Shown here piece after piece: positions 17,036-64,000 of a stretch of DNA of 64,000 nucleotides. The notes under the pieces were generated by a model. That model searched no databases, was not told where the DNA came from, and saw only the letters and a program-made list of their open reading frames with translations. A program made the translations under genes and the position numbers. Positions within the stretch are counted from its first letter, which is position 1, and each line of letters starts with the position of its first letter. This DNA is from Macrostomum lignano (lineage: Eukaryota), in assembly GCA_002269645.1 (NCBI GenBank), contig NIVC01001393.1:124001-188000 (forward strand). Direction: 5' to 3'.

Positions 17036-17125
17036 CCGGGTACAGCACCGATTTGGTGACTCGCTCGTCACCGCTCTTGAAAGTGGGCCTCAGCTGTTAG
17101 AGCAAGCCTGCTGGACTGTCCGAAG
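17036..17125 (-). mobile_element. Short fragment of the same RTE-like LINE
   Basis: Reverse strand reads AGLL*..TFKSGDERVTKSVLY and shares GGTGACTCGCTCGTC with the 5.5-kb copy. Confidence 0.55.
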
Positions 17126-38035: not shown

Positions 38036-38941
38036 ATGGCGCACGCAAATGCACTTTTACCGCCAAAGTTTTCTGGCTCAGACGATACCGATATCAACAT
38101 GTGGCTGCAGATGTTTGAGGACTTTGCAGCAGATTCTGAGTGGAACGACACCAAGATGGCATCCAAGATCAAGCTGCTTCTATCAGGTGAAGCCCTCGTG
38201 TTCGTCTGGGACCTGCCAGCGGCCAAACAGAGCAGCCACAAGATCTTAAAGGACGAACTCGTCAAGTTCTACAGAGGCAAGGATAACACTTTTCGCGCTA
38301 TGTCTGAGTTCGAGAGCCGGAAGCGACGCCAAGGAGAGTCGCTGAGGGAGCTGTGCTACGCACTCAAGCTTCTGTATCGAAAGGCACGCCCGGAGCACGC
38401 TCAAACGGTGAGAGATTGCGAAGTGCGACACCGACTGCTAGCTCTGCTGCCGACAGAGATCCGTGAGGCTCTGTTGAAAGCTTCGAATTATGACAGCAGC
38501 AGTCCTGAACAGCTGGCAGACCGCGCCACAGCGCTGGAGAGCATCGGCAGCAAAAGAGCCCCGGTAAGCGTCGCAGTGACATCGGTGAGCAGCCAAGTGA
38601 CTGACCGGCTGGAGCAAATGCAAGAGCAGTTGGCGGATCTGGCTGCGACAGTCGCCACCATTGGCAGCCGCGGAGGACAGCGCGGTGGGAGAAGGAATGC
38701 AGCTCGTGGAAGAGGCAGCACCCGTGGAAAATGCTTTAACTGCGCTCAGCCTGGTCATTTCGCTGCTCAGTGTCCAGGCAAGCAAGTCGCTCCAGCTGTG
38801 CCGTCTGTGTGCAGCCGCTGCTCAGGCAGAGGACACTCGTTCCGCACTTCGCCAGCATCGCTAATCCGCTTCATCAGGCGACTCAGAAGAGTCGACAGTT
38901 TCAATGGACAACTCAGTGCGATGACGCTCTGCGGAAGCTGA
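38036..38941 (+). CDS. gag: Gag with CCHC zinc knuckle, truncated by the deletion and running out of frame after about 38845
   Basis: PPKFSGSDDTDINMWLQMFE, RKRRQGESL, CFNCAQPGHFAAQC; the second knuckle CSRCSGRGH is cut. Confidence 0.9.
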   Translation: MAHANALLPPKFSGSDDTDINMWLQMFEDFAADSEWNDTKMASKIKLLLSGEALVFVWDLPAAKQSSHKILKDELVKFYRGKDNTFRAMSEFESRKRRQGESLRELCYALKLLYRKARPEHAQTVRDCEVRHRLLALLPTEIREALLKASNYDSSSPEQLADRATALESIGSKRAPVSVAVTSVSSQVTDRLEQMQEQLADLAATVATIGSRGGQRGGRRNAARGRGSTRGKCFNCAQPGHFAAQCPGKQVAPAVPSVCSRCSGRGHSFRTSPASLIRFIRRLRRVDSFNGQLSAMTLCGS

Positions 38942-45188: not shown

Positions 45189-46799
45189 GACAAATGTTGT
45201 TCGTGTTTGGTAACAACTGGAACTCGCGACTTCACCGGTTTTTCATCACATTTTCCCCTCCCTGACACTATTCCAGCTGGGTTGAAAACTGGTGTTAAGC
45301 CTTCTCGGAGGTCGCTGGACAACAGTGGATTCACGAATGATTACGAATGGCAATTTCTGACCTTACTTTGTTTAACAAGTATTGAGCCCAGATATGCTTG
45401 GGTTGAACCGTGCATATTTGTAGTGCTCACAGTTGCTCATTTCAAACTCAACTGCCGGTGAAAATTTACAAATAAACCTGAAGTCGGGGACTCAGGTCCC
45501 AGAAAACTTCGCTTGCTCCTAATTCTGCACTCAAAAGGCAATTTAACTGTGTTTTTTATTCTCTTTTTCTAGAGCGAATAGTAGTGTGTTTTACTGCATA
45601 TTTCCAATATTCAATGCTGACGATAGAACACATCGACAATTTGCAACTTGTAACAGCTTAAGGCATACTTATGTCGTACTAACGACTGGAGCATCAGAAA
45701 CTAGCAGCGTACGCTTGAAGACAGGCATCATTTAAAGTTACGGTTGAACGTTACTCCAGTTTTATGGACAATGGCTTAAATTCAGAAAAACTGCTCCAAG
45801 AGTCCGAACAAACGCTGAAAACTTAGCAAAATCACCGTTCTTCCTGGCCTCTGCAATGAATTTTTTCTAATTGGGGATTTTTCTTATCCCGAGATTGTCT
45901 ATGGTAAAACGTCATTCGATGCAATACAATATCCAAAAACTCATTTAGGGAGAACACACTGTACTTCAAGTTTTTCCCGCTTCTAGCAGTTTAAAAAGTA
46001 AAAAAAATATCGGGCCTTCAACCGTAATTACAACCTGATTACAGCCGTAACTTCTAGAGGTCCTTGAGTTTAAGCCGATAGGTTGTCCATTTCATTAATT
46101 TGTTTTGCTTCGGGGATAAACTAACACAGTTTCTAACCCTTTGAAATTGGGTTCACGGAAGTTGGTTTACAGATGATTTCAAATATGCGTGTTTGGATGG
46201 CTCTCCTGGAAGTCGCATATCTGAGTGTACTTACTCGTCTGTCGTCCATTAGGTCCAGCCTCCCGAGGCACGGCACGTCAATTGGTAAGGATAACTCGCG
46301 TTGGATCATTAAAACTGTTTCACAAGCGTCTTAAAATCCGCTTAAGTCGTGCAATCATTTCCTAGGGCCTTGATTTGATCTGCGCCATTTTAAATGAGCA
46401 GCTCCGTTAAAAGTCTTTGTACCATTTTACAAAGGGCTTAAAAATTAATTAGAAGGCCTCATTCAATAAAATTAAAAACGATTTAATCCGATTGAATTCT
46501 TTTTAATTAGCTCATAAGTCTCATTAATTCTTAAATTGAACGCAATTCAGTGTCGAACAGTAACGTCTTTTCTCAAAGGCAAAAAATAGCCTATCCAAAC
46601 ACAGTTGCATCTGTTTGTAGCAACTGTGCCTGCTCCAGGCATTGCCCATCCACTCTGTGGGTATTGAGGTCACCAGAGTGATGAACCGCGCGTGCTCGTC
46701 GGTGAGAGGAGGCACCCAACGAAATGACCACGGCACACGTCGTCGCAATTCATAAGAAGCCGGGCACCACAGGACTTAAAGAGAGTGGAGCATCTGCCT

Positions 46800-47270
46800 T
46801 CAGTGCTGAGCTGCGAAGCTGATCAACCGGATGCTGCTATCGCGGTTGCAGCCCACGCTGGATCTGCGACCTGCGCAGAACGGGTTCCGGCCCCATTGTG
46901 GCACAAGTGGCCTACGGATCTGCAGCATCGCTGCTGGCTTGATTTAGCTGCCTTTCGTTCTTTGATGGCGGTCCTGCAGTCGGAGGCCCTACCAAACCAG
47001 GCTGTAGTTGTTACTTGAGTGGTTAAGTCTACAGCGCCCAAAACTTGGGCTCTGACAGATTTGCAAGTTGCAAGTCGACAATCGTCTGTCGTTACTTTGT
47101 TGCTTTACAGAATGGGCGACGATTGAGTCACAAACATAGCCTACTTTATCGCCGCGCCGGCATGGCCCGTCCAAAAGACGTGTAACGTCATTTGAACGAG
47201 TCCTACAGGCATCGTACCATAGGCCAGGGCAGGAATCTGTCGTTATTCGGCAGCGCTGCTTATGTTCAAA
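46800..47270 (+). mobile_element. Decayed RTE-like LINE fragment between the two ILP genes
   Basis: LAAFRSLMAVLQSEALP and GDD*VTN..LYRRAGMARP. Confidence 0.65.
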
Positions 47271-48087
47271 CCCGAGCGCTGGGGTGCGCCCTGTGACTCC
47301 ACTTTTATAACCTTGAAGTGAATCATGGTGTTTTTGTACATGTGCGTATGCTCAACTTGGTTTGAGTCTGAGTGTCTTCAACTTGAAGCCTCCGTTGTTT
47401 GAACTAATGAACTGAACTTTCCTGTTAGTTAGTTCTTAGGGAGCTTTGGTCACTACGGCAAATCAAGCCCTTCCACTGATCCCTGAGCATGCCCACGCAT
47501 GCACATTACGTTCGGCAGAACCGCCCTCACACACGTAATTAGTCAGTATTATATATCTATTCTTCATAAAGTAGCTACTCTACACGTGCAAGTATGCTTT
47601 CCCTTATAAATACTTCTTTGCTTAGAAATCGGATTTCCTGAAAGTTGGATTCCCAGATTTCAAGCCTCGCCCCTTCGATGCAATATTTGCTGACCGCCCA
47701 CCTGGCGTCTTCCTGTTTCCGCGCCAATCAAACCGAGTCGAGCAGAATTTCAATCATTGGCTTATGCAGCTGCATCAGCGCGCACTGATTGGCCACTGAA
47801 GCCAATAAATTGCTGCTACTCCCGGCCCTCAAAACTGATTTATCTGCCACTCGTCCAAGGCTCGACTAAAAAAGGCGTCTTTCAGGAGTGCACTTATAGT
47901 TTTCCCGTCTAAACTGTGTGGGCGTTTCCTTTACCTGCTCTTTTTTGAAGGCAGCTAGCACTACCTGTAGCTTCAATGGCTAGCGGAGCCGCGTTTTCGG
48001 CGGAAGGTCTTCGAGTAAGTCTAACAGTCTCTCGCTCAGCCACTTCCTATGTCTAATTTATCAATGCCTCACCTGTCTGCAGGGTGC

Positions 48088-48615
48088 ATGCCGCTTCTCC
48101 TAATGCCCCTGCTGCTGCTGCCTTTGCTGCTGCTGCCAATGGCTTCAGCTTCATCAAAGATGACTCTGGAGGAGGCCAACCGGCTGAACGAGTACGCGCA
48201 CAAGCGCATCCGGTCCTGCAACTTGCGCAGACTGCTCAGCACCATCATGGTGCTGTGCAAAGAGGTGGGCCTGTACAACTCCAGCAACGCGGCGTGCAAA
48301 AAAGCTTCCGGCGAAGCTCCATCCAAGCGAGACGTCGACTTCTCCAAACTGCAGGTGCTGCCGGACGACAGACAGACAGGCGGCGGCTCACTGCCTTGGA
48401 GCACAATGCACCCTGGTGAGCGCAACAGTGTAGTTGGTGAGCTCGTGACGCAGCAACTGCTTGATGCTGTGTACAGAGTTCGTCTGACTAAATAGATTTA
48501 TTTTTGTTTCTTATTAAAATTGATTTCAGACGAGAGTGCTGTGCTGGATGCCTGCTGCTACCGGCACTGCAACTACTGCATGCTGCAGAGGTACTGCTGC
48601 ACTGCGCCAACGTAA
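48088..48615 (+). CDS. Insulin-like peptide precursor 2; 2 coding exons, about 137 aa
   Basis: Exons 48088-48415 and 48530-48615 (phase 1). Leu-rich signal peptide, B chain RSCNLRRLLSTIMVLCKE, KK/KR sites, A chain ACCYRHCNYCMLQRYCC. A 5'-UTR intron runs 48015-48082. Confidence 0.87.
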
Positions 48616-49260
48616 GTTCACACTGCGTAGCACTGCGCTTCATTAAGCATAAGTGTAATCTCATCGCAACTGCAACCGATTTCCAGTTGGGCCAAGAAGT
48701 TCTGCTACTATACCATGCCCTACGACGCGAAATAAGGACCTAAACTGGGCCGCGAACCTGCTTAAAACTAAAACCATTGATGAGCAACCCCTACCCTATG
48801 AGTTGATCCCAACCAACTCATGCCGCAGTGGTCTGCAAACGCATAGCCAATGGCTTTGACTGTTAAGCTCCCACAAGAAGCTACTTATTCAGCAAATATA
48901 TCTAGCGGCCAACAGCGCCACCCAAATCGCAAGTGGTTATATTTGCGCGTCTAAGTTTTTGCATTAAAAATGAAAAAAAATCACGCCTTTAAGGCAAGCA
49001 TTCCACATTTCAATCGGTTGAAACTTTGTGGACTTTTTTAATTTGATAAAAATTAAAATCAAACTATAAGTAAATAACTTTTGAGGCTTTGTATCTGAGT
49101 AATTACAAACTATTGAAATTATTTTTAATTAATTTTAATTGGTTTTGATACATGAATTGAAATAAGGCAATTTTAAGGACTTTGAAATATCTCAGTCAAA
49201 CTGATCATAAGGCATCAATACGTTATAGAGCAATATTGACAGGCTGCAGAGGGTTAAAAC

Positions 49261-49320
49261 CAAGGAGTTCTATACTTAGCAAGGTGCTAATTAGCAAGGT
49301 GCTAATTATAGAGCTCCTTG
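49261..49320. mobile_element. 60-bp P-like mini element
   Basis: TIR CAAGGAGTTCTATA / TATAGAGCTCCTTG; flanks GTTAAAAC / GTTGAAAC (8-bp TSD with 1 mismatch). Confidence 0.55.
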
Positions 49321-49407
49321 GTTGAAACGAGCCAAAACCTCGAGGAGAGTAAGCGTCGGAACGTGAAAATGTCTATGGAAAAAACTGGAAAATCCATACA
49401 GCTGGGT

Positions 49408-49598
49408 CAAGGAGTTCTATAATTAGCAACCTGGAGTGGAAGCGAGCTTTACCTCATGAGGCCATGCCAATTGTAAAGATAAGGAGCCAGCACTGAATGT
49501 CTATGGCTCTGTCTGACTCTGTCTATGCTAGTCTGGCCTAATGAGGCAAAACTGAAAAACTCGTTTCCACACCAGGTTGCTGGTTGTAGAACTCCTTG
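49408..49598. mobile_element. 191-bp P-like MITE of the same TIR family
   Basis: Imperfect TIRs of about 39 bp, CAAGGAGTTCTATAATTAGCAACCTGGAGTGGAAGCGAG; 7-bp TSD GCTGGGT. Confidence 0.7.
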
Positions 49599-49720
49599 GC
49601 TGGGTCAAGGAAGTCTGTGGTCTGAAGGCAGAGCTGCCCCACGTAAACAATAATCTGTGTAGCTCAAAGAGTATTGAGGTCGCCTAGTATAGAGCACAGA
49701 ATATACACAGAATAGTACAT

Positions 49721-49840
49721 TAATACCCATGCTTTAAGGGCGTTAATGGGAAAATCAGAGGGCGCCATTAGGCGTTAGGCGTTAGGCTACCGTTAGGCGC
49801 CCGAGGATTTCTCATTAACGCCCTTAAAGCATGGGTATTA
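49721..49840. repeat. Palindromic mini element (arms of about 35 bp)
   Basis: TAATACCCATGCTTTAAGGGCGTTAATGGGAAAATC ... GATTTCTCATTAACGCCCTTAAAGCATGGGTATTA. Confidence 0.8.
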
Positions 49841-50470
49841 CTATCATTGTGCCATAGACATTTGTGTCCTTGACAAAGTGGGACAAAATTAGCGGGCAGC
49901 TAATGATATTAACTGCCCGCTAATTGCATTAGAGTAAGTTTGAAATAGACAATCGGGCGTTAAATGTCAATAATCCATAGAAATAAAGACTTTCCGTGAC
50001 AATATTTGCGTTCTCCGGGATTTTATTTGGTAATATTCAATAATATCCCGTAAAGTCTTTATGTCTATGGTTTATACGAGATTACACATGCCTTTTTCGG
50101 GAGTTATTTTCATAAATCCCTCGGGCCTCAGGCCCTCGTGATAACTCCCTCAAAAGGCATGTTTGCCCGCTAATGCCCGCTAATTTGCATTAAAGTAAGT
50201 GTGACTCCTGCAAGCGGGCTTAAATGTAGTTTATGGCATTAGAAGGCAAGAATAAGTGCCCAGCGGGCACAAAGGTCATCGTACGATGCCGATTCGAGCA
50301 TTTTTGTTTAAAAAATCGGTGCAAGAATTGAAATCACACCAGCCTACTCTTGTTGTGAAGCTTTGATAAGTAGGTAGTAGTTGAGTTTTTGCCATAGACT
50401 ATTCAAAGAGCGACTTTTATTCTTTGCTTTCAAATGAAAATTAAGTTCAGTCTGAGCGTTTCTGCGCAGC

Positions 50471-51117
50471 ATGGCTGGAAAATCCAGACTCCAGTGCGCA
50501 GCCTATGGATGCCCAAACTATGCCTACAAGTGCCCTCCGGACACCCGATTTCATCGATTTCCGTCAAGCCGCGAGAGGTGAGTAAACTTATTATATGAGG
50601 GGTCTTTCAAAAGTTCGTAGAAAAGCCATCTCCCCTTAAACATATGCCCTTGAAAATTTTCCATTCTCCAAGCTTTCTCCTCCATTCTCCAGGAGGCTGG
50701 CTGCTTTTCAAGCTATTCAAATCTGAGGAAAAGTGCGAGGAGTGCCAGCAGTCGTTAAAAGGCGATGGCTCGGGAGAGATGCGCTTCCTGCAGCTTAAGA
50801 ACGGACAGGGCGGGACTGGAAATCTGATCATTCCCAACAAGGCAGTCATATCTGCAGTCTGTCAGATGGAGCGCTCCTTCACGACAACGGACAAAGAGCT
50901 TCTGAAGGACGTGAGCAAACGGCTTCAGGAAAAGTTCTTTCCCATTGTTCTTGCAAATATTCAGACGCACAGCTCGGATCACGGCGAACGCTGTGCTAAG
51001 GCAATGGCCAAGTTGTTTGCCAGACTTCGCCTGCATCACTGGTGCAACAGTCAGAGGACGCTCGCTCAGCAGAGAAAGCGGGGGCGTGCGACAGGAATAA
51101 TGAGAGCTGAAGACTAA
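50471..51117 (+). pseudogene. Internally deleted THAP / P-element-type (THAP9-like) transposase
   Basis: Exon 50471-50577 MAGKSRLQCAAYGCPN...RFHRFP (THAP start, donor GTGAGT). Exon from 50693 GGWLLFKL...KCEEC...LKNGQGG..LIIP...RLRLHH resembles the P-transposase C-terminus. The phases are incompatible and the catalytic core is absent. Confidence 0.75.
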
Positions 51118-51422
51118 AGAGAGGAAGAAGCTGATGCGATTAAATGCTGTTTAACTGTAGTTTAACTCTGATGCGAATGAATTCTGCTTAACTGGAGTTC
51201 TTCAGAGTGTTTGGTTTGTTTAGATGATAAAATACGAAAAAATGATAAAATTTTACATTTGGTCCTCCAAGTGGGATCTCTGACTACCTGCGAGACTTTG
51301 CTAAATTATTCTTCGCTAATTTTATACTACTGGCCATAGACTTCACAACAAGAGTAGTGCACACGAATTTTAATTCGGCTTCATGGAAATCGCTCGATTT
51401 GGCATTCTGTGTATATTCTGTG

Positions 51423-51886
51423 AGTATAGAGTGCCAATAAGGATGAAAATCTGAAGCCAATTTTTAGAATCCACCCACCCCCTCCGGTCACCAAGCTTTT
51501 TAGTCTATGGCACAAGTTGTGGCTAGAATGGTGTACAAAGCCGATGCTTAAGATTAATACAGATGCATCAGAAACACAGTTATTGCAATTAGCTACCGCG
51601 CACTTTAGTGGCATGGCTTTTGTTGTTCAGACGTAAGGGCTATGGCATGGCTGTTACGGAGTTGTGTATCGATGACGGCAACTGAGTCTGGTGACTGAGC
51701 GATGTTGTCTTGCTTATTTGATACATGCATTTTCTAAGTGTGAAATGTCTTATATTTCTGAGCATCGGCTTTGTACACCATTCTAGCCACAACTTGTGCC
51801 ATAGACTAAAAAGCTTGGTGACCGGAGGGGGTGGGTGGATTCTAAAAATCAGCTTCAGATTTTCGTCCTTATTGGCACTCTATACT
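51423..51886. repeat. 126-bp inverted repeat with a 212-bp spacer containing a THAP-like start (-)
   Basis: Arms at 51423-51548 and 51761-51886 with about 3 mismatches; the spacer reads MPLKCAVANCNN on the minus strand from 51614. Confidence 0.85.
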
Positions 51887-52430
51887 AGGCGACCTCAATA
51901 CTCTTTGGTGTAGCTATATGTAAATATGCATCCGTGAATTTGACTTGACTTACTTGACTTAGCTGCAGGAGGCATCGTCCGGCGGATGCAGCGAGGAGGC
52001 GGAGGAGACCGTCCATTTTGCTAGGCCCTGGCGACCAATGACTTCCATCGAAGTGATGTCGCTTAGGGGGACCCGTCGGTCTCGCCTGCAACACGGTCCT
52101 CCTCACCGGCAGTGGGGAAGAACTCAGCTCGTCCCGTGTCCTTAAGGTACCGAGAGCGGTATGCTCTCAGGCCTTCAAACGTTCCTGCATCTGTGAATTT
52201 AGTCTGTGACAGAAACTGACGATCATTTTTTGCATGATTAAAACAGTTTCCTTAGCCATCTAAGAGACAAAAATATGAGTAGTTCCTTAGTTTCTTAATC
52301 ATTTAAATAATGGTATATTCTTCTGCAGTCGGCACTGCAGATGAGTGCATTGACTAGCGTTTCCCTATAGGCTAGCAGTCTATGGTAAAAGAAAGACAAT
52401 AACACGCAGTCTCGTAAGAAGTCTCTTTGG

Positions 52431-53385
52431 CCATAGACAATTTGAACAGAACAGTCATTTAAGCGAGCATCAGTAAGAACTGTTTGCTGCGAGATATAAA
52501 GCTTGGGCAAATGCTACTTGAGTATGCAGAACTAAATTAATTAAAAGCGAGACATGTCTACATCTTCTAAACTTCTACCGCCGTTACTTAACTACAACGC
52601 TCTGCCGACGGATGAGATTAGTGGCGTCAGTGGCGCCAAAGCCCCTTAAAGGACTGCCTGGTCAACAGTTCCGGTTCTCTGAGAAATGTGCACGGGGATT
52701 TCGATTCCTAAAAGATTTCATGAAGACCCTGAGTGCTAAAGCTGGATTGAGTAAAAATTACACTAATCACTGTATCCGGTAAGTGTTGACCTCTGTTCAA
52801 GAATGATAAATGTTTTACAATATTCGTTCAATAATTATTTATTCTATAACTTTCAGTGTCACTAGAGTATGCGACCTTGAAAGCCGTGGCCATTCGTTGC
52901 CAAGCATTATGATGGTAACGGGACACAAATGCGAAAAGACCGTGAAGCGATACTTAAGCACGCGCCGCGATCGGAGTTTGTTTAAGAGTTCCGAGGTCGT
53001 ACACGATGCATTGCATCGTGACATTCCAAGCGCTGGTGAACAGGCCTCTGGTTCCGGCTTGTGTGCTGCTGAAAAATTTGATAAACCTACCGCCTGCACA
53101 TCCGTGTTGACTGTCGCCAGCAGCAGTGTCGCTACGGTATCGCACAACAAACCTGTTCAAATCCAAGCTAGCCCGGCAAAAAAAATGCGTGTCAATATCG
53201 ATGGCGGTAATAATTTGATAAGTATTGAATTTGAGTAACGACTTTTTTGACAAGAATTTTAAACAATTTGTTGCTCGAAAAGGCTATTAACAAAAAACGT
53301 TTAATTGTGTCAAATACGTTTTTTTTACTCCGTATCGTTTGCACGTTTGTCAGTTTTTCGTTATTATGAAATAAAAACCATAGAC
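52431..53385 (+). mobile_element. Crypton-type (DUF3504-like) tyrosine recombinase remnant A, bounded by direct CCATAGAC
   Basis: LLNFYRRYL...FMKTLSAKAGLSKNYTNHCIR | intron 52779-52856 | VTRVCDLESRGHS...VTGHKCEKTVKRYL, giving HxxR, GH and the catalytic Y. Confidence 0.82.
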
Positions 53386-53482
53386 TATAACTTGCATACA
53401 TGTTGACTTTTTATCTATGGACAAAAACACGCAAGTGTGGACAATAACACGCATCCCAAATGCGTGTTAATGGGTAGCGAAA

Positions 53483-53616
53483 TGCTTGTCAATGGTAAGT
53501 TGTGTATGCGGTTGCCGAGATAGACAATAAGAAATTGTCACGAGTGGCGAAGCCACGAGTGACAATTCTTATTGTCTATGAGGCAACCGCATACACAACA
53601 ACATTGACAAACGCAC
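53483..53616. repeat. Long hairpin with a central GTGGC-GGAA-GCCAC loop
   Basis: Near-perfect arms of about 48 bp from 53499 to 53599, with an imperfect extension. Confidence 0.85.
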
Positions 53617-53729
53617 CCGACAAGATTTCCTCCGTTGCACAAACCGTCATTGAGCAACGTTGCTCAATGACGGTATAAAAATAGCTCTACTTGTTCGTGA
53701 GGATTGGCTGGGCAGAGGAGAAGGATGGA

Positions 53730-54662
53730 CCATAGACAAAAAAACATTGGCTAAAGCTGACGGAAGGATGGAAGGAAGGAAGGAAGGCAAGAGTAGAAGC
53801 CCCAAGCCTGAACAGTCTGAACCACCAGTGAGCGCCTTAAACTTGCAAATGATAAATTGGGCTAATCTACCTGTTGACGCCTTAAACGGTGTCACCGCAC
53901 CAGAGTTGCGACTCTTGACGCATCTAAGTTCGGCCGATCATAGGATCATGGCAAACAGCTGGAGCTGCTACAGCTATACGGCGCAACCCTGCCAGCTGAG
54001 ACGAAGGATGACACCTTCTTTCCCCGGCCAATGCCCAACAAGAACGGTCAGGTCGTGTATTCGGCGAAGCAGACGCGCGGGATCAACTGGCTGGGCTCCC
54101 TGATGCAGCGCCTCAGTCAGGTCTGCACATTGTCTAAGCGGTACACCAATCATTGCATCCGCGTGACGCGGATCGCAGATCTGCGGGACGCCGGATTCAC
54201 CATCAATGACATCATGAGCATCACGGGCCAGCAGAGTGAGGCGACCGTGCGACGGTACCTGTCACGCAAGCGAGATCGCACGATGAGGGATCTGGCAACG
54301 TCTGTGAGCGACGCACTGGTCCGGCATGTGGAGGGCGAATCGGAGCCCGCCCCACGGGTGGTGTCAAGTGCGACTAGCAACGTGAGCAACAGAGCCGTCA
54401 GCGTTACGGGCCGCAACTACGCTGCGGTATTTGGTGACTGCAGTTTCACCAACTGCACTTTCACGATCGGACCGCCCCAGGAGCCCCACTGAGCATCTGC
54501 ATCTGTATTTTGACAATGGACAGAGGGAGTGCAGCACATGCTGCTGTCAGTTGCGTTACTGTTTCAATTGCGCTAATTGTTTCAAATCGTTTCAATTCGT
54601 TTTTGCCTAAAATAAAGTCAAAAAGGCCAATCTGTTTGGCGTGGCCTGGCGTGGCCATAGAC
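53730..54662 (+). mobile_element. Crypton-type tyrosine recombinase remnant B, bounded by direct CCATAGAC
   Basis: N-terminal MINWANLPVDALNG (53849), then TFFPRP...YTNHCIRVTRIADLRDAGF...ITGQQSEATVRRYL...FTNCTF (ORF 54031-54492). Confidence 0.85.
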
Positions 54663-55342
54663 ATCCGTCTACCGTTGAACAATCATGATTATTGGGTCTG
54701 AGTGGGGAAGTTGGTCAATGCCCACTAATTTTAAACCATATAGTGTGCTGGACAAAAGTTGCAGCAGCATGCTTGAGAGAAAATATCTGGCTATAAAAAA
54801 ATACGAAATACCCTACCGCAGAACTTTATAGAAGCAAATTTAAAGCAGTCAACTACAGTTTATGAGAGAGCTATTCAGACTTCATGGACTCTGCTTAAAC
54901 TTCAGAGGTCCAATCAGCCTTGGACTAAAGTTCCGCAACACGCATCAGCAGCTAGAAGAGTGTAGAAGAGTCTGAACTAGAAGAGCCAGTTCAACAGCGC
55001 CTCCCACATGTTTGTACCACCTTCAACTGGTTGCCTCCTTTTGGCTGCGTTTCAACTCAGCACGCCTCCTGAAATCTCTTAATGATGTTGTCGGCTGCTA
55101 TATTCCCAGCTGATTGGCCAACAAAATCCAGTCCTCGGCGGCGCGATTAAAAGCATTGATCAATCTCTGACAATCGAGTCGAGAAATTTGCGCATAGTTG
55201 CCACGCTGCGCCATTGCGCCCTCGAAATTCCACATTGACAACTAGCAAAATTCTATGTTAATAAGATTGTCATTAACTTTTCTTAGCTCAAGTGTCCCTT
55301 TTCAGGATATCAATGAATGAAATTTCGTCTCGAATTTTCGTA

Positions 55343-56095
55343 GTCTATGGTAAAACAAGTTCCAACCAAGTATGCTTTTATATTTGAAAAGAAATTATAC
55401 TTTTATAGGATTATTATGATTTTGTTTTCTTTTACGCTTTCGTACTTTTATAATTTCGTAACAGTAACGCAACAATTTTCGGCTTGTTAGTTTATTTCAT
55501 TCAATCAAACGACGTTTTACTTTTTCCAAGCTACTGCTTACCAACGATCCAGTTAGATTAAACGTGCAATTCTGGAAGGTCCCGTTGAAGTTCACGACGA
55601 TTGCAGCCGGCTCTGATTGCCGTTCTCCATACTTGGTTTCAATAGCCATTGTCTCACTGATCGCCACTTCACCATCCTGACCAACACGACGGATAGAGAC
55701 CTGGGAGGCGCTTGTCTCGACGCTCAGCGCTGATGACATCGCACGGAAGTCGGCATCGCGCCTCACTCGCGTATAGCGCTCTACGCTCGCTGAATTCTTG
55801 TGGCCGGTGTTAACTGCGATGGTCCTGATCTTCGCTTAGGTCCTTAATCTCTTCAGCGTCTAGTTGTCGAGCGAACACGCCACTCAATTCTTCCAAATAG
55901 CGGGTTGCTGACTCTGACGACACCCAATTCAACTCCTCTGTTGACAGACCACTAATAAGTTGGTCGGGCAGATTCGCATAGTTCAACATTCTTAGTCAGT
56001 AGTTGATTAGACAGACAGAACTTTCTAGAATCGTTGCTTCAAAACGCGGCTCCCTAGCCCTGTCCTCTCGATCAATCAAAGTGTTTAGTCTATGG
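55343..56095 (-). mobile_element. Crypton-type tyrosine recombinase remnant C (minus), bounded by direct GTCTATGG
   Basis: N-terminal MLNYANLPDQLISG (from 55989) is homologous to remnant B; the 3' part reads NTGHKNSASVERY...FQNCTFN. Confidence 0.75.
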
Positions 56096-56317
56096 CACAA
56101 AGATTTGCCCATCCACCGAAAAAAATAGCCTTCGACCATAGACTTTCTCAACTTCCTGCCTATCTCTAACATAGTGCCCGCAAATTTCCACGTTGTTACC
56201 CGCAAATTTCTTGCATTGATTAAGTTAATGACAATAATTTTTTGTCGCTCGGAAGTACCATAGACAAAATATTTGGTTGAAATTGTATGGCCATAGGCTG
56301 CTTATCATAGTTTTTGG

Positions 56318-57737
56318 CCATAGACTATGTTTTCAAAGAAGAAAGGCACAGAGGTGAGAGAGAGGATTGAGAAAATGAAAGCTCTCTAATAACCCTACTA
56401 CGAGCTAGCTAGAAAAGCATCATGGAGCAGGACGAGGTGGCGTTTCCATGGATGAAGAATATAATTGGATCGCCAAAAGCTCGATTTTTTGGTCCTAGCC
56501 ATAGACAAGCACCAGCATCACAAGAAGCTCAAAATGGGATCACAACTCGTACGGCATTCGGCTGCTGTACGGACTGGGAGAACGGGGCAGAGAGCACCTG
56601 TCGAGCTTGGAAATAAAGGATTGGTTGGAGAAGAAAAGCGACTCTGAAGGAAGGATGTAACTTGGAAGGACAAAGAACAGGGCAGCTGATCAGGCGAAAG
56701 CCAAAAGTGACGTCGAAATCAAGCAGGCCAGGATATGACACAGCAATTATAGACGAGTATTTTCTATACAAACCAGTGAAATCCTGCCTGGTGAAACGAA
56801 GGACACTTCCCTGTTCCCAAGACCGCTAAGAAATTCGCCGACTGGAGCACGGCGGTTTTGTGCTGAGCAGAAGAGAGGCGTAAACTACCTCATCAACTTC
56901 ATGAAGACTCTGAGTGGAAAGGCCAAGCTATCCAAAGTGTACACCAACCATGCACTGCATCAGGTAAACCCCTTTGCCCAAACGTATAGCCTCATGATGC
57001 TTACAATTGTGCGATACCTTCTGCCCATTATGTTAGAGTCAGCAGGGTGAGCGACTTAGAAGCAGCTGGACATTCCATGACCGACATCATGGCGATAACC
57101 GGCCGGAAGTGCGAAAAGACCGTTCGCCGATATCTCTCAATCAGACGTGACAAGCTGCTAAAGAAGTGCAGCGACGCCGAAAGCAAAGTACTGGACATGG
57201 AGAAAAACCTACACCGGATTCAGATGGCCATGTTATTACGAGCGAGCGCCCATCAGCCAGTACAACAGATGGCCCAGCAGTCAACACAAGCGTCTGCCCA
57301 GTCAACATCCAGAGCTCAACGGTCCAGTGGGCGGTCAACTTCGCAAACGTTCATCCAAATGGCAAGAACATCTTCGTCATTCAAAACAGCACGTTCAACC
57401 AATGCAGTCTGTGAGAATTCATGAGCAACTGACTCTACAAGCCAAAATATTTCAAGAGACTTTAGCCCTCTTGAAATTTGAAATTTGATTGTATTTCTTA
57501 TTGTTTCTTGTCACCTTTTTGTTACTGTGCATTGTTGTATTGTATTGTATTGTTACTGTGGTATACTATTTTTCTAAATAAATTGTGGACATTATCCACA
57601 AGTCATGGACATTATCCAGAACTGTGACGCTAGAACCACAGGCTATAGAGTGAAATCAAAGTTGCGATAGTTTTTACCATAGAATATTATCTAAAAGCAC
57701 TGACTAGCGACAATGTCTGATTCATTTTGCCATAGAC
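56318..57737 (+). pseudogene. Crypton-type tyrosine recombinase remnant D (longest, with stops and frameshifts), bounded by direct CCATAGAC
   Basis: LLYGLGERGREHL (box I Arg), GRTKN (Lys), SLFPRP, FMKTLSGKAKLSKVYTNH[+4 nt]CIR | intron 56964-57036 | VSRVSDLEAAGHS...ITGRKCEKTVRRYL. Confidence 0.85.
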
Positions 57738-59137
57738 TATGAAACCCAGAAAATTCTTTTCCCTCATTCGCTTGCTTGCGTCTGGCAAAATCAATTGCAA
57801 ATAGGAAGAATTCTATTGAGGCATATACGAGTATTGTGCTACGCTCGTAAAAATGGTTGCATTTTCTGACCATAACGAGCGTCATTCAAGTAATCACAAT
57901 CTGAGCAATAAAAGGTCATCAAGGACCAAGCATTCAACCATCCCATAGGAACAAATTTTCTGTTTGAAATTTTTCTTTATTAAGAAATGAACACTTGCAT
58001 TAGTGCAAGGGTACTTCTCCACAAAAAGAAAGTTTAGTTGCTGAGCTATTATTAATTACTAATAGACTCATTGCTCTAATTGAAAGCATTTCTCCGTTTG
58101 TGTTTGTGGACGATCAACGCTTCCTAAGCTGGCCCCCGCGAAGTCTCTGGATCCCACGGCAATCGTGCAGAAGCAGACGTGCTTAAAGAGATTTTTAATT
58201 AGGTACTTGTAATTAGCTCTAGGCTACATGTAGCTGTTCCGCCTTAATTAGCAGCTTAAGGGCGGGGCTAGAGCTTTTTTGAGGTGATCAAGTTTGTTTC
58301 AAATCAGACATCTCTGAATTGGATTGTGAAAATTATAAAAAAAATTAATCCATTTTTCTGGCAAAAATGGAACAAAATAAATGCATTTACCAGTTGGAGG
58401 TTGCTGTGAAACCAAAGCTGAATTTTGCGAACTGACATCTCTTCGTTGATGGTTACCTGAGCTGCTTGCTTTTCAAACGTACGACCAGCAATGCATCTAG
58501 GATGTCAACCATTGAGCATATGCATTTGGAAATAGAAGCACTTTTAAACAGAATTCTGTAATTCTGTAATGACACCTGTTTTGTTTGAATTTCATGAAAC
58601 TTTTCAATAGTTTTCATCTCTGCAGCTGTGAACATTTTTAATCAGATTTATGTAAGATGGCAACACAAATAGTCTGAAATGCTTGCGAATAAAAGCAGAT
58701 TGTGCTCAATAGGCAAGCCCACGCTTTTAGACTGACAATTTGGCTTTCACATTTGCCTTGCTCTAGTGGTGGAAGCATTCACCATTACTCTTCAACTTCC
58801 ATTGTCCTGTGCTCAATGCTCTGTTTTCGAGTTATACCTTCAACCTGCTGGCTGAAAAGCAATTTTTAGCGCAGTTTTTTTATCTTTCTGTAGGCTTTGG
58901 GCCTCGAGGCAGACGGCAGCAGGGCAAACTCTCTCTGGGGCAGTGAAGATTCCATTCTTTTAATTTAGCATGCGCAACATGTTACTCTAGTGTTTTATAA
59001 TAGCTGTGTAGCTAGCATTTCATTTTTCTTTGTTTTCTTTGTACTCCATAAGCCCAAAGTTGTATGCACTAACTGTGTATGTATGTAGAAACTAATATGC
59101 ATTGAGATTGAATTACATTTAAAACAATGGCTTAGGA

Positions 59138-60590
59138 GTCCTCAGACTCAGTCTCCTTACCGCTGGTGGTCCTCAGACTCAGAGTCTCCTTACCGCTGGT
59201 GTTCCTCAGACTCAGTCTCCATACCACTGGTGTTCCTCAGACTCAGTCTCCTTACCGCTGGTGGTCCTCAGACTCAGTCTCCTTACCGCTGGTGGTCCTC
59301 AGACTCAGTCTCCTTACCGCTGGTGGTCCTCAGACTCAGAGTCTCCTTACCGCTGGTGGTCCTCAGACTCAGAGTCTCCTTACCACTGGTGGTCCTCAGA
59401 CTCAGAGTCTCCTTACCGCTGGTGGTCCTCAGACTCAGTCTCCTTACCGCTGGTGGTCCTCAGACTCAGTCTCCTTACCGCTGGTGGTCCTCAGACTCAG
59501 TCTCCTTACCGCTGGTGGTCCTCAGACTCAGTCTCCTTACCACTGGTGGTCCTCAGACTCAGAGTCTTCTTACCGCTGGTGGTCCTCAGACTCAGTCTCC
59601 TTACCACTGGTGTTACTCAGACTCAGTCTTCTTACCGCTGGTGTCCTCAGACTCAGAGTCTTCTTACCACTGGTGGTCCTCAGACTCAGAGTCTCCTTAC
59701 CACTAGTGGTCCTCAGACTCAGTCTCCTTACCGCTGGTGGTCCTCAGACTCAGTCTCCTTACCACTGGTGGTCCGCAGACTCAGTCTCCTTACCACTAGT
59801 GGTCCTCAGACTCAGTCTCCTCACCACTAGTGGTCCTCAGACTCAGTCTCCTCACCACTAGTGGTCCCCAGACTCAGTCTCCTTACCACTAGTGGTCCTC
59901 AGACTCAGTCTTCTTACCGCTGGTGGTCCTCAGACTCAGTCTCCTTACCACTAGTGGTCCTCAGACTCAGTCTCCTTACCGCTGGTGGTCCTCAGACTCA
60001 GTCTCCTTACCACTGGTGGTCCTCAGACTCAGTCTCCTTACCGCTGGTGGTCCTCAGACTCAGTCTCCTTACCACTGGTGGTCCGCAGACTCAGTCTCCT
60101 TACCACTAGTGGTCCTCAGACTCAGTCTCCTTACCGCTGGTGGTCCTCAGACTCAGTCTCCTTACCACTGGTGGTCCGCAGACTCAGTCTCCTTACCACT
60201 AGTGGTCCTCAGACTCAGTCTCCTCACCACTAGTGGTCCTCAGACTCAGTCTCCTCACCACTAGTGGTCCTCAGACTCAGTCTCCTCACCACTAGTGGTC
60301 CGGTCCTCAGACTCAGTCTCCTCACCACTAGTGGTCCGGTCCTCAGACTCAGTCTCCTCACCACTAGTGGTCCCCAGACTCAGTCTCCTTACCACTAGTG
60401 GTCCTCAGACTCAGTCTCCTCACCACTGGTGGTCCTCAGACTCAGTCTCCTTACCACTGGTGGTCCTCAGACTCAGTCTTCTTACCGCTGGTGGTCCTCA
60501 GACTCAGTCTCCTTACCACTGGTGGTCCTCAGACTCAGTCTCCTTACCACTGGTGGTCCTCAGACTCAGTCTCCTTACCGCTGGTGGTCC
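59138..60590. repeat. 31/33-bp minisatellite (CCTCAGACTCAGTCTCCTTACCGCTGGTGGT)n, about 45 copies
   Basis: Tandem array with AG-insertion variants; the ORFs are artefacts. Confidence 0.95.
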
Positions 60591-60989
60591 TCCGTCTACT
60601 TCTAGCGAATGCTGCGGACCAAGCAAAAGAAAACGGCCCTTAAAATCAAAGATTGCGAAGGCACAGAAGCAGCTGAGCCTAGCAGGTTTATTTAAAGAAA
60701 TTTTCCAAAATTTCCCTTTCCTTTTCTTTTTTCCACGCTATCAGCTGGTTGGAATCTGAAAAGCTTTTTATGTCAATAAAATCTCAAAAAATATGGGGAA
60801 AATCAGTTTTAATTATGCTTCTGATGTACTCGTAAATGCAAAACATATTTGTCCACACTGTGTTGACACCTGCGACATGCCGCTTTATTAGCAGCCCGGT
60901 ACCACCTGAGCTGTCGCTTTGTGCGACAGAAATCCGAATTTGCAGGTAAACACAGCTACCTGGAATTCCTGTCTGAAAAACTGCAAGAA

Positions 60990-63900: not shown

Positions 63901-64000
63901 TAAACTCAGGATCTGCAGGTATCTAAACTCAGGATCTGCAGGTATCTAAACTCAGGATCTGCAGGTATCTAAACTCAGGATCTGCAGGGATCTAAACTCA
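60990..64000. repeat. 23-bp satellite (GATCTGCAGGGATCTAAACTCAG)n, about 130 copies, continuing past the window end
   Basis: Highly homogeneous tandem array with recurrent variants (CTAAA, GGTATCT, AAATGAG). Confidence 0.97.

What the first reader, a model, noticed from the sequence alone, without database searches (positions are those of the whole stretch)
49371..57737. Cassette-like nest of ~1-kb units bounded by direct CCATAGAC repeats, enriched in tyrosine-recombinase genes
Seen: I count 20 exact CCATAGAC/GTCTATGG copies in 8.4 kb, against about 0.2 expected for this 8-mer at ~40% GC; I found only about 4 elsewhere in the window. Same-orientation pairs bracket six units: 50392-51341 (+, THAP/P-transposase), 51503-52385 (-, THAP start), 52431-53385 (+, YR), 53730-54662 (+, YR), 55343-56095 (-, YR) and 56318-57737 (+, YR). 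Motif orientation flips exactly when the enclosed gene flips. Known: Cryptons are YR transposons with short terminal direct repeats instead of TIRs, thought to move as circles. From memory, TATGG termini were described for CryptonS, and GTCTATGG contains TATGG. Inference: CCATAGAC is the crossover/target site. Units keep integrating into each other's ends and build an integron- or shufflon-like array that can also carry non-YR cargo.
Basis: partly seen in the sequence, partly recalled or inferred. Interest (0 to 1): 0.85.

Follow-up and report, generated by a model that had tools for sequence, protein, structure and literature searches.

The report
Transposon nest sharing an internal 8-mer

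Summary
The count is right. CCATAGAC occurs 25 times in the window (1.1 expected), 20 of them in 49371-57737. One-mismatch variants are only at chance level. The window is Macrostomum lignano contig NIVC01001393.1.

The "units" are internally deleted or frameshifted Crypton-like tyrosine-recombinase genes (C, D, E, F), THAP/P-like remnants (A, B) and MITE/foldback derivatives.

The same 8-mer recurs elsewhere in this genome: 19 copies in 111 kb of other contigs, about 2 expected. It lies 93-115 bp upstream of the recombinase ATG in six diverged elements, and in either orientation once other species are included. It is often found again just past the poly(A) signal.

Where copy boundaries can be read, they ignore the motif:
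- Unit E has a 96% identical paralogue whose homology runs 77 and 140 bp beyond the motifs and stops at 14-bp terminal inverted repeats.
- Unit A lies inside 16-bp inverted repeats.
- An intact element has 22-bp inverted repeats 171 bp outside its 5' motif.
- None of these has a target-site duplication.

So the motif is an internal protein-binding element, not the crossover site. The most likely role is a promoter-proximal site; a subterminal recombinase-binding site is the main alternative. The integron-like cassette model remains possible only for units C, D and F.

The parts
49253..49328 (.). 76-bp palindrome made of two TIR-like arms of the MITE family seen at 49406-49598
   Evidence: Inverted repeats I4, I7 and I11.
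49371..49378 (-). Motif copy 1, between the two MITE copies, 28 nt left of MITE 49406-49598
49406..49598 (.). Foldback MITE with 43-nt arms (49408-49450 / 49556-49598); motif copy 2 (49499-49506, minus) lies in its central loop
   Evidence: I2. It is 81% identical to L010 3748-3917 of the same genome, and the homology ends at the arms, not at the motif.
49721..49859 (.). 33-nt-armed hairpin (49721-49753 / 49808-49840) followed 12 nt later by motif copy 3 (49852-49859, plus)
   Evidence: (I3).
49970..50075 (.). 37-nt-armed hairpin; the right arm holds motif copy 4 (50063-50070, minus) and the left arm holds CCATAGAA (49975)
   Evidence: (I5).
50344..51357 (+). Element A*. It has 16-bp perfect TIRs, CTACTCTTGTTGTGAA (50344-50359) and TTCACAACAAGAGTAG (51342-51357). 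Inside are motif copies 5 (50392, plus) and 6 (51334, plus) and an internally deleted THAP/P-like gene: ATG at 50471, exon 1 ending at a GTGAGT donor, then ORF 50599-51117. No TSD.
   Evidence: THAP similarity is weak: Pfam E = 0.078 and THAP1 in the PDB E = 0.04.
51423..51886 (.). Inverted-repeat element with 126-bp arms that are 98% complementary. Motif copies 7 (51503, minus) and 8 (51799, plus) lie 80 nt from each outer end and point outward. The centre carries a THAP-like start (MPLKCAVANCNN, 51614 reading leftward).
   Evidence: (I1).
51887..52385 (-). Fragment B: remnant resembling the C-terminus of the unit-A protein (..FCHRLNSQMQERLKA), headed by motif copy 9 (52378, minus) and cut off on its 3' side by the inverted-repeat element
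   Evidence: Reading. The similarity is by eye only.
52378..52438 (.). Divergent motif pair (copies 9 and 10) with a 45-nt spacer, heading B (minus) and C (plus)
   Evidence: Similar divergent pairs are at 56088/56136, L002 6807/6880, L002 9623/9707 and L005 9849/9895.
52431..53385 (+). Unit C, an internally deleted Crypton-like YR gene between motif copies 10 (52431) and 11 (53378). N-terminal ATG at 52554, 115 nt after the motif. It matches full-length residues about 2-21 and about 290-440, with an intron at 52771-52857. AATAAA at 53370, 2 nt before the 3' motif. No TIR found.
53499..53599 (.). Hairpin element. Its 27-nt core is identical to L002 9655-9681. The arms contain ATAGAC / GTCTAT (motif lacking CC) pointing inward.
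53730..54662 (+). Unit D, an internally deleted and frameshifted YR gene between motif copies 12 (53730) and 13 (54655). ATG at 53849, 111 nt after the motif. Residues 1-34 are fused to about 278-end at a GATCAT microhomology with a frameshift. No intron. AATAAA at 54611.
55226..55265 (+). 40-nt segment X, which abuts element E* here and also abuts its paralogue in L005 (9717-9756), but with E* in the opposite orientation relative to X
55266..56235 (-). Element E*, a TIR-bounded non-autonomous Crypton-like element. TIRs are ATTGTCATTAACTT (55266-55279) and its complement (56222-56235). It contains motif copies 14 (55343, minus; 77 nt from the left end), 15 (56088, minus; 98 nt upstream of the ATG at 55989) and 16 (56136, plus; 92 nt from the right end). 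The YR remnant covers residues 4-52 plus about 381-end. No TSD.
   Evidence: It is 96% identical to L005 10590-9757, with homology ending exactly at the TIRs and unrelated flanks beyond. See also tblastn.
56258..56506 (+). Three closely spaced plus-strand motif copies (17: 56258; 18: 56318; 19: 56499) upstream of the F remnant
56499..57737 (+). Unit F, a 5'-truncated YR gene (full-length residues about 178-405) whose homology starts 10-30 nt after motif 56499. It has an intron at the same position as in C. AATAAA at 57577. Motif copy 20 is at 57730.

Best explanation
The region is a nest of decayed DNA transposons in the Macrostomum lignano genome. It holds four internally deleted or truncated copies of a Crypton-like tyrosine-recombinase (YR) element family (C, D, E, F), two THAP/P-like remnants (A, B) and several ORF-less MITE/foldback derivatives, inserted next to and into one another.

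CCATAGAC is a short, exactly conserved protein-binding cis-element that these elements carry internally. One copy sits about 100 bp upstream of the ORF start. Often a second sits just downstream of the poly(A) signal, and sometimes an extra divergent copy lies 40-85 bp further upstream. The enrichment of 20 copies in 8.4 kb arises because many ~1-kb elements, each with 2-3 copies, are packed together.

The mobile units are larger than the motif-to-motif intervals. Where they can be delimited, they end in short terminal inverted repeats of 14-22 bp and have no target-site duplication. That fits conservative, recombinase-type integration at the element tips, not at the motif.

Shown: the motif statistics, its positions, its conservation across contigs and species, the copy boundaries and TIRs for E, A and the intact element, and the degenerate state of all the genes.

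Inferred: the role of the motif. I commit to a promoter-proximal binding site for a sequence-specific factor, probably a host factor. It would be used by several transposon families to define their small transcription units, with the 3' copies acting on termination or on the next unit. I put about 45% on this role, about 25% on a subterminal ('arm-type') binding site for the element's own recombinase, and about 10% on the crossover site. The confidence given (0.6) is for the structural reading: a transposon nest with an internal motif that is not the element terminus.
For: (1) Source of the window. It is M. lignano GCA_002269645.1 contig NIVC01001393.1; L011 is 100% identical over 18.2 kb.

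(2) The motif elsewhere in the genome. Other contigs of the same genome carry it: L002 has 6, L005 has 7, L004 has 2, L010 has 4 and L008 has 0. That is 19 in 111 kb against about 2 expected.

(3) Position relative to the ORF start. The gap from the motif to the YR start codon is 115 (C), 111 (D), 98 (E), 99 (intact L002 element), 95 (L006) and 93 (L007) nt. There is no DNA similarity in the intervening sequence. In L006 and L007, from other flatworm samples, the motif is inverted. The gap is 71 nt for the THAP gene of A and 142 nt for an unrelated 546-aa ORF in L010. The motif is also about 90 nt upstream of a piggyBac-like pseudogene in L004.

(4) 3' copies. They follow AATAAA by 2 nt (C), 38 nt (D), 17 nt (L006) and 22 nt (L002, one mismatch, inverted).

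(5) Copy boundaries.
- Window 55266-56235 is 96% identical to L005 10590-9757. Homology stops exactly at 14-bp TIRs and the flanks are unrelated.
- Unit A lies within perfect 16-bp TIRs.
- The intact element in L002 has 22-bp TIRs at 9723 and 11569.
- MITE 49406-49598 matches L010 3748-3917 with the motif in its centre.
- The inverted-repeat element 51423-51886 has the motif 80 nt inside each arm.
- No TSD is seen at any of these.

(6) Gene state. Full-length relatives are 450-495 aa. The M. lignano paralogue P0195 keeps GERGQEH, NHCIR and RRY, which are the R, H, R and Y of the tetrad. Every window copy lacks large parts or is frameshifted.

(7) Site architecture. The flanks of the 8-mer show no dyad symmetry and no conserved arms, which a YR core site would have.
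Against: - The flanking pair is a direct repeat in A, C, D, E, F and L006. In L006 it is anti-oriented to the gene. That is what integration of a one-site circle would give.
- F's homology begins within about 10-30 nt of a motif, so a rearrangement breakpoint sits next to a site.
- Short motif-to-motif intervals without genes exist: 56136-56258-56318-56499, and 7782-7889.
- No TIRs could be found for C, D or F, so their boundaries are unknown.
- For the promoter role specifically: the motif is inverted in L006 and L007, it is kept in ORF-less MITEs, and it occurs near both ends of elements. Those features fit a transposition-related binding site at least as well.
- The TIR of the L002 element contains ATAGACTA.
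- No transcript-end data were available, and only about 175 kb of the genome was examined.
Confidence: 0.6

Rival explanations
1. Subterminal recombinase-binding site. CCATAGAC would be bound by the element-encoded YR (for example its N-terminal domain) or a partner protein, and would help assemble the ends for excision and integration. It would work like lambda Int arm-type sites or the subterminal motifs of P, Ac/Ds and En/Spm elements. Crossover itself would occur at the TIR tips.
For: - Copies lie within 16-205 bp of both ends of delimitable elements, in either orientation and sometimes in multiples: E* at 77, 92 and 140 nt; A* at 48 and 16 nt; the inverted-repeat element at 80 and 80 nt; the L005 foldback at 205 and 205 nt.
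- The motif is retained in ORF-less MITEs.
- Its orientation relative to the ORF is not fixed across species.
- The L002 TIR contains ATAGACTA.
- The motif is conserved across YR lineages that are only 30-50% identical.
Against: - The same exact 8-mer lies upstream of a piggyBac-like pseudogene, a THAP/P-like gene and an unrelated 546-aa ORF.
- The TIR sequences of A*, E* and the L002 element are unrelated to each other, yet the motif is invariant. That is easier to explain by one host factor.
- In M. lignano all 8 gene-proximal 5' copies are co-oriented with the gene, which suggests a directional, transcription-related role.
Confidence: 0.25
2. CCATAGAC would be the crossover/attachment site of circular ~1-kb cassettes moved by a Crypton-type YR, and repeated integration into existing sites would build an integron- or shufflon-like array. 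A version compatible with my data is that cassettes integrate into an internal site of TIR-bounded carrier elements, much as integrons sit inside Tn402-type transposons.
For: - Direct-repeat pairs flank the transcription unit in A, C, D, E, F and L006.
- The site lies between the poly(A) signal and the 5' leader, where a one-gene circle could be opened without harm.
- Divergent pairs have cassettes on both sides: B/C at 52378/52431, and E on one side of 56088/56136.
- F is truncated next to a motif.
- There are gene-less mini-intervals between direct copies.
- Cryptons are thought to move as circles and to recombine at short repeats (PMC3212892).
Against: - The E copy pair shares 77 and 140 bp beyond the motifs and ends at TIRs.
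- A lies inside TIRs.
- The intact L002 element has an inverted, imperfect 3' copy, and TIRs 171 bp outside its 5' copy.
- L007 has two 5' copies and no 3' copy.
- Two MITEs carry the motif centrally.
- The motif occurs next to non-YR genes.
- There are no conserved inverted arms around the 8-mer as in known YR core sites.
- No intact recombinase is present in the array.
- Animal Cryptons are reported to lack terminal repeats.
Confidence: 0.1
3. An ordinary tandem family of host genes (KIAA1958/DUF3504-like) with a shared promoter motif, and no mobile elements involved.
For: - The units are paralogues at 43-63% amino-acid identity with a conserved motif about 100 nt upstream of the ATG.
- DUF3504 genes are domesticated Crypton recombinases in animals (PMC3212892).
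Against: - Every copy is internally deleted, truncated or frameshifted.
- Copies are bounded by TIRs, and one has a 96% identical paralogue in unrelated flanks on another contig.
- Intact relatives keep the catalytic R-H-R-Y residues, unlike domesticated DUF3504 (PMC3212892 abstract).
- About 1.8-kb contigs that each carry a single full-length ORF recur in several sequencing runs.
Confidence: 0.03
4. A chance or compositional effect, or the motif is just part of one longer repeat that was copied many times.
For: The copy at 8233 is explained by a coding sequence. Copies 51503 and 51799 are the two arms of one inverted repeat.
Against: - 0 of 100 shuffles reach 25 copies.
- 19 distinct flanks show no similarity beyond about 5 nt on either side.
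- The same 8-mer is enriched on other contigs and in other species' elements.
Confidence: 0.01

Closest known systems
Crypton DNA transposons (CryptonA group of animals; Goodwin 2003, Kojima & Jurka 2011, PMC3212892)
   Same: - A single ORF encodes a tyrosine recombinase of the DUF3504/QRICH1-N/Phage_integrase type with R-H-R-Y retained.
- There is no reverse transcriptase and no target-site duplication.
- Non-autonomous derivatives are made by internal deletion.
   Different: - The delimitable Macrostomum copies end in 14-22-bp terminal inverted repeats. Animal Cryptons were reported to have no terminal repeats, and fungal and oomycete ones to have 4-6-bp direct repeats.
- A conserved internal 8-mer has not been described for Cryptons in the papers I could search.
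CryptonS of oomycetes and diatoms, with TATGG termini
   Same: GTCTATGG contains TATGG, and both are associated with YR elements.
   Different: - CryptonS is a stramenopile group with its own conserved C-terminal region.
- There TATGG is the 5-6-bp terminal direct repeat. Here the 8-mer lies 16-205 bp inside the element ends.
- The resemblance is most likely a coincidence.
Subterminal binding motifs of TIR transposons (P-element THAP sites and 11-bp internal repeats, Ac/Ds AAACGG, En/Spm 12-mers) and lambda Int arm-type sites
   Same: Short motifs, repeated in either orientation within about 200 bp of both ends. They are kept in non-autonomous derivatives and are distinct from the cleavage/crossover point.
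   Different: Binding by an element-encoded protein is untested here. The motif is also shared by elements with unrelated TIRs and unrelated genes, which is unusual for transposase-specific sites. (The properties of the known systems are stated from my own knowledge.)
Integron cassette arrays / shufflons
   Same: An array of small units separated by a repeated short site, with recombinase homologues present and some units inverted together with their sites.
   Different: - The unit boundaries that could be tested do not coincide with the site.
- The site has no attC- or sfx-like inverted-arm structure.
- There is no intact recombinase or common promoter at the array.
- The units are decayed copies of the recombinase gene itself, not cargo.
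Transposon promoters that reuse a host transcription-factor site (for example heat-shock elements in M. lignano LTR retrotransposons, PMC12801592, title and abstract only)
   Same: One exact host-type motif shared by unrelated transposon families of one genome, at a fixed distance upstream of the ORF.
   Different: No factor is known for CCATAGAC and no expression data were examined. The motif also occurs at 3' ends and in MITEs.

Membership tests
Crypton (YR DNA transposon) | Encodes a tyrosine recombinase with the catalytic R-H-R-Y residues and no reverse transcriptase | tested here: met
   Met at family level. Full-length relatives, including the M. lignano paralogue P0195, keep GERGQEH, NHCIR and RRY. 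Pfam gives DUF3504, QRICH1 and Phage_integrase for P0050. The window copies themselves are truncated: C, D and E lack the first Arg region, and F starts at it. No RT domain lies in the cluster.
Crypton (YR DNA transposon) | Integration without target-site duplication | tested here: met
   No TSD at E* in either copy, at A*, or at the intact L002 element.
Crypton (YR DNA transposon) | Termini are short direct repeats (fungi, oomycetes) or no repeats (animals), and no TIRs | tested here: not met
   14-, 16- and 22-bp TIRs bound E*, A* and the L002 element. TIR-like ends are also seen in L007.
Crypton (YR DNA transposon) | Excision as a circle and reintegration by conservative recombination | not testable with these tools
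   This needs eccDNA, inverse PCR or in vitro recombination.
CryptonS | TATGG forms the terminal direct repeat of the element | tested here: not met
   The 8-mer containing TATGG lies 16-205 bp inside the delimited ends.
CryptonS | Stramenopile host and the CryptonS-specific conserved C-terminal region | tested here: not met
   The host is a flatworm. The C-terminal tail motif here (NF.G.F.NC.F) is shared with animal-sample homologues. No phylogeny was made.
Integron-/shufflon-like site-specific cassette array | Unit boundaries coincide with the recombination site (homology between copies ends at the site) | tested here: not met
   Not met for E, for A and for the MITE at 49406-49598. Undetermined for C, D and F, which have no second copy and no TIR.
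Integron-/shufflon-like site-specific cassette array | The site has the architecture of a YR core site: inverted binding arms around a 6-8-bp spacer | tested here: not met
   Information content is confined to about TTKKR-CCATAGAC-WW, with no dyad.
Integron-/shufflon-like site-specific cassette array | A functional recombinase gene is associated with the array | tested here: not met
   All four YR copies in the window are deleted or truncated. Intact copies exist elsewhere in the genome (L002), so action in trans is possible.
Integron-/shufflon-like site-specific cassette array | Free circular cassettes, and empty sites with a single copy of the site | not testable with these tools
   This needs the whole genome, population data or eccDNA sequencing.
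P element / THAP9 superfamily (unit A) | N-terminal THAP zinc finger | tested here: inconclusive
   Only the first ~35 residues (C-x2-C .. FHRFP) are present. Pfam THAP E = 0.078; PDB THAP1 E = 0.04.
P element / THAP9 superfamily (unit A) | RNase-H-like catalytic core and 8-bp target-site duplication | tested here: not met
   No catalytic region is present, since the gene model is only 183 aa and has no Pfam hit. The flanks ACACCAGC and TGCACACG are not a duplication.
Promoter-proximal transcription-factor site | Constrained distance to the gene start across diverged copies and across unrelated genes | tested here: met
   Gaps of 93-115 nt in six YR elements, then 71 nt (THAP), 142 nt (546-aa ORF) and about 90 nt (piggyBac-like pseudogene).
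Promoter-proximal transcription-factor site | Transcription starts near the site and depends on it | not testable with these tools
   No RAMPAGE/CAGE or reporter data are available here. The promoter sequences in the supplement of PMC5730564 were not held or contained no match.

The most novel reading that the evidence does not exclude
CCATAGAC is a recognition or crossover site for the Macrostomum Crypton-type recombinases. Gene-sized segments would be integrated, excised or inverted at it inside TIR-bounded carrier elements. That would be a eukaryotic analogue of an integron carried by a transposon, and this locus would be an array built by repeated site-specific events. The direct-repeat pairs around A, C, D, E, F and L006, the breakpoint of F next to a motif, and the gene-less motif-to-motif mini-intervals all remain compatible with this.
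Probability: 0.1. Interest if true: 0.85.

Novelty: new variant of a known kind. Interest (0 to 1): 0.4.

Why it matters
How eukaryotic Cryptons recognise their ends is essentially unknown, and animal Cryptons have been described as having no terminal structures.

If this reading holds, Macrostomum offers compact (~1.85 kb) Crypton-like elements with three useful properties. They have clear terminal inverted repeats. They make no target-site duplication. They carry an invariant internal 8-mer at fixed positions. An intact copy (BOX15_Mlig009749g2) sits in a transgenesis-capable model animal, which makes the mechanism directly testable.

The practical point is smaller. The 8-mer is a convenient marker for this transposon population, and possibly a strong small promoter element for M. 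lignano constructs.

For the scan itself, the lesson is that a striking array of direct 8-mers around recombinase genes can be an internal cis-element of nested elements rather than their junction.

Tried and rejected
- **Trans-splice acceptor (TTTTGCCATAG|AC).** Rejected. The M. lignano acceptor motif is YTNCAG (PMC8629364). An 8-mer is too exact for a splice site, and the motif is inverted in L006 and L007.
- **8-bp target-site duplication of a hAT or P element.** Rejected. The sequence is the same at every site, no TIR lies directly inside the repeats, and orientation is coupled to the gene.
- **Spliced-leader or retrocopy remnant.** Rejected. The SL sequence is unrelated, and C and F keep an intron.
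- **General host core-promoter motif.** Not supported by the small sample. Most annotated host genes in 111 kb lack the motif, and L008 (24 kb) has none.
- **Known RNA family.** No Rfam hit in the window.
- **Literature search for the 8-mer.** Only primer sequences turned up. Nothing came up for Macrostomum with the motif or with Crypton.
- **Single-sequence homologue search with unit D.** It gave one hit because of the word filter. The profile search was needed.
- **Pfam on the window fragments.** Nearly blank.
- **Exact-protein look-ups of two window ORFs.** Both failed. A third identified the contig.
- **TIR searches around C, D, F and B.** Nothing convincing.
- **The E* TIR sequence elsewhere.** It occurs nowhere else in the window.
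- **All-against-all comparison of the ~175 kb of M. lignano sequence in hand.** It gave no further copy pairs.
- **Supplement of PMC5730564.** It held no promoter sequence with the motif.

Full report
**1. The observation**

CCATAGAC/GTCTATGG occurs 25 times in the 64-kb window. Dinucleotide-preserving shuffles expect 1.14, with a maximum of 8, and 0 of 100 reach 25.

The element is remarkably exact. Only 29 further sites differ by one base, and the total with up to one mismatch is 54 against 38.7 expected, so degenerate copies are at background level.

Nineteen distinct flanks share nothing beyond a weak T-rich/R context on the 5' side and W-W on the 3' side, roughly TTKKR-CCATAGAC-WW. There is no dyad symmetry. 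Apart from one inverted repeat, blastn finds no DNA similarity between the units. So the enrichment is not one long repeat copied many times.

Of the five copies outside the cluster, 8233 lies in a coding exon (LAID) of an FkbM-like methyltransferase gene. Copies 7782 and 7889 form a direct pair 107 bp apart in that gene's intron.

**2. The source**

The window carries an innexin exon whose named relatives are all flatworm proteins. A 59-aa ORF of unit E is annotated in Macrostomum lignano assembly GCA_002269645.1, contig NIVC01001393.1. The fetched locus is 100% identical to window 45810-64000. The other M. lignano loci I fetched (L002, L004, L005, L008, L010) are therefore other parts of the same genome.

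**3. What the units encode**

C, D and F share 43-63% amino-acid identity over the C-terminal half of a tyrosine recombinase (..YTNHCIRVT..ITGH/Q..RRYL..). E keeps only the last part.

A profile search finds 4,510 relatives. Full-length ones are 450-495 aa and hit DUF3504, QRICH1 and Phage_integrase in Pfam. That places them in the Crypton / KIAA1958-like clade.

Unlike domesticated DUF3504 proteins, the full-length relatives keep the catalytic Arg (GERGQEH), His-x-x-Arg (NHCIR) and Tyr (RRY). This includes the M. lignano protein BOX15_Mlig009749g2 (P0195).

Against these, every window copy is defective:
- C matches residues about 2-21 plus about 290-440.
- D matches 1-34 fused to about 278-end, across a GATCAT microhomology with a frameshift.
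- E matches 4-52 plus about 381-end.
- F matches about 178-405 only.

Unit A joins the first ~35 residues of a THAP finger (weak: E = 0.04-0.08) to a C-terminal region that, by eye, resembles the tail of P/THAP9 transposases. B is a smaller remnant of the same tail.

These are dead, internally deleted transposon copies. They are not a gene family and not cargo cassettes.

**4. The motif elsewhere**

The same 8-mer is enriched on other contigs. L002 has 6, L005 has 7, L004 has 2, L010 has 4 and L008 has 0, which is 19 in 111 kb against about 2 expected. The three loci chosen only for holding innexin genes have 6 in 69.5 kb. The cluster density of 2.4 per kb is about 28 times that.

The position is conserved. 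The gap between the motif and the recombinase ATG is:

| Element | Gap (nt) | Orientation relative to the gene |
|---|---|---|
| C | 115 | co-oriented |
| D | 111 | co-oriented |
| E | 98 | co-oriented |
| Intact L002 element | 99 | co-oriented |
| L006 (another sample) | 95 | opposite |
| L007 (another sample) | 93 | opposite |

The motif also lies 71 nt before the THAP ATG of A and 142 nt before an intronless 546-aa ORF of unknown family (L010). It is about 90 nt before the start of homology of a piggyBac-like pseudogene in L004.

A second copy follows the poly(A) signal by 2 nt (C), 38 nt (D), 17 nt (L006) and 22 nt (L002; one mismatch, inverted). L007 has none. Divergent pairs 40-76 bp apart recur at window 52378/52431 and 56088/56136, L002 6807/6880 and 9623/9707, and L005 9849/9895.

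**5. Where mobile copies end**

- **E.** Window 55266-56235 is 96% identical to L005 10590-9757. The homology runs 77 bp beyond the left motif of unit E and 140 bp beyond its right motif. It takes in a third, divergent motif and stops exactly at a perfect 14-bp inverted repeat, ATTGTCATTAACTT. Beyond that the flanks are unrelated, apart from a 40-nt segment discussed below.
- **A.** Unit A sits inside perfect 16-bp inverted repeats at 50344-50359 and 51342-51357. The chance expectation in that search space is about 4e-5 by my arithmetic.
- **Intact element.** The element in L002 (1,847 bp) has 22-bp inverted repeats at 9723 and 11569, which is 171 bp outside its 5' motif.
- **MITE.** The MITE at 49406-49598 matches L010 3748-3917 from arm to arm, with the motif in the middle.
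- **Inverted-repeat element.** The element at 51423-51886 has the motif 80 nt inside each 126-bp arm.
- None of these shows a target-site duplication.

For C, D and F I found neither a second copy nor TIRs, so their boundaries remain unknown.

**6. Interpretation**

The structure is a transposon nest. The motif is an internal, strongly constrained cis-element.

Several observations point to a factor-binding site with a promoter-type role, most simply for a host factor:
- It is identical in elements with unrelated TIRs.
- It is identical in recombinase lineages only 30-50% identical to each other.
- It lies next to YR, THAP/P-like, piggyBac-like and unknown ORFs.
- It lies at a fixed distance from the start codon.
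- It is co-oriented with the gene in all eight M. lignano cases.

Other observations fit a subterminal ('arm-type') binding site for the recombinase about as well:
- It is present near both ends of elements.
- It is retained in ORF-less MITEs.
- It is inverted in L006 and L007.
- The L002 TIR contains ATAGACTA.

I cannot separate these two roles without transcript-end or binding data. I rank them about 45% and 25%.

The lack of TSDs together with short TIRs suggests conservative recombination at the element tips. A circle junction would form a perfect palindrome, for example AAGTTAATGACAAT|ATTGTCATTAACTT. This step is inference.

**7.

- The flanking pair is a direct repeat in A, C, D, E, F and L006.
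- F's homology starts within about 10-30 nt of motif 56499.
- There are gene-less motif-to-motif intervals of 60-181 bp.
- E* is inverted relative to the shared 40-nt segment X in its two copies. That could be a site-specific inversion, though between the TIRs and not between motifs.

A carrier-plus-cassette version of the model is therefore not excluded. I give it about 10%.

**8. Comparison with known systems**

The same paper found no terminal repeats in animal Cryptons (PMC3212892).

The Macrostomum elements fit Crypton in three ways: the recombinase type, the absence of RT and the absence of TSD. They differ in having TIRs and the conserved internal 8-mer. I found no description of either feature in the searchable literature, which is not proof that none exists.

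I rate this a new variant of a known kind. It is of moderate interest to transposon specialists and of low general surprise.

Noticed in passing
window 55226-55265 and L005 9717-9756: A 40-nt segment abuts the TIR element E* in both genomic copies, but E* is in opposite orientation relative to it, and the other flank differs. Either the same short target was hit twice in both orientations, or the TIR-bounded segment inverted by site-specific recombination between its 14-bp inverted repeats.
   Followed up: partly
window 53537-53563 and L002 9655-9681: A 27-nt hairpin core (TCACGAGTGGCGAAGCCACGAGTGAC) is identical at two loci. In L002 it is the centre of a 92-bp palindrome whose tips are exact motif copies pointing outward. 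In the window, the arms carry ATAGAC/GTCTAT pointing inward.
   Followed up: partly
window 7782-7896: Two plus-strand motif copies lie 107 bp apart, each preceded by TTAGA/TAAGA. They sit in the intron of a minus-strand FkbM-like methyltransferase gene (exons about 8203-8772 and 6833-7513). This is a gene-less motif-to-motif mini-unit outside the cluster.
   Followed up: no
L010 4339-6129: An intronless 546-aa ORF with no Pfam match has the motif 142 nt upstream of its ATG. It is possibly another transposon-borne gene.
   Followed up: partly
L005 4014-5390: A large near-perfect foldback, with outer arms 98% and inner arms 100% complementary. Motif copies lie near the inner ends of the outer arms, pointing inward, and there is a local 153-bp duplication that doubles the motif (5020, 5033, 5173).
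   Followed up: no
window 38018-40803: Gypsy-type LTR retrotransposon gag/pol ORFs (zf-CCHC, RNase H, integrase zinc-binding and core domains). They are unrelated to the motif cluster.
   Followed up: no
window 3002-36534 and 59138-64000: Very many minisatellite arrays with 14-33-bp units and up to 130 copies, for example 9322-10244, 16316-17036, 31977-32784, 35594-36521, 59138-60592 and 61000-64000. The 29-bp array at 30367-30813 has a 76% similar array in L004. There is also a low-GC block (28-34% GC) at 22-30 kb.
   Followed up: no
window 13448-14737 and 3580-4323: Host gene exons: an innexin (Pfam E = 9e-50) and the transmembrane region of a Cys-loop ligand-gated channel.
   Followed up: no
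L003, L006, L007 and other ~1.8-2.1-kb Logan/ENA contigs: Full-length relatives of the recombinase repeatedly sit on contigs of about 1.8-2.1 kb in unrelated sequencing runs. That is about the size of the TIR-bounded element in L002 (1,847 bp). This would be expected if assemblies break at the ends of a multicopy element.
   Followed up: partly
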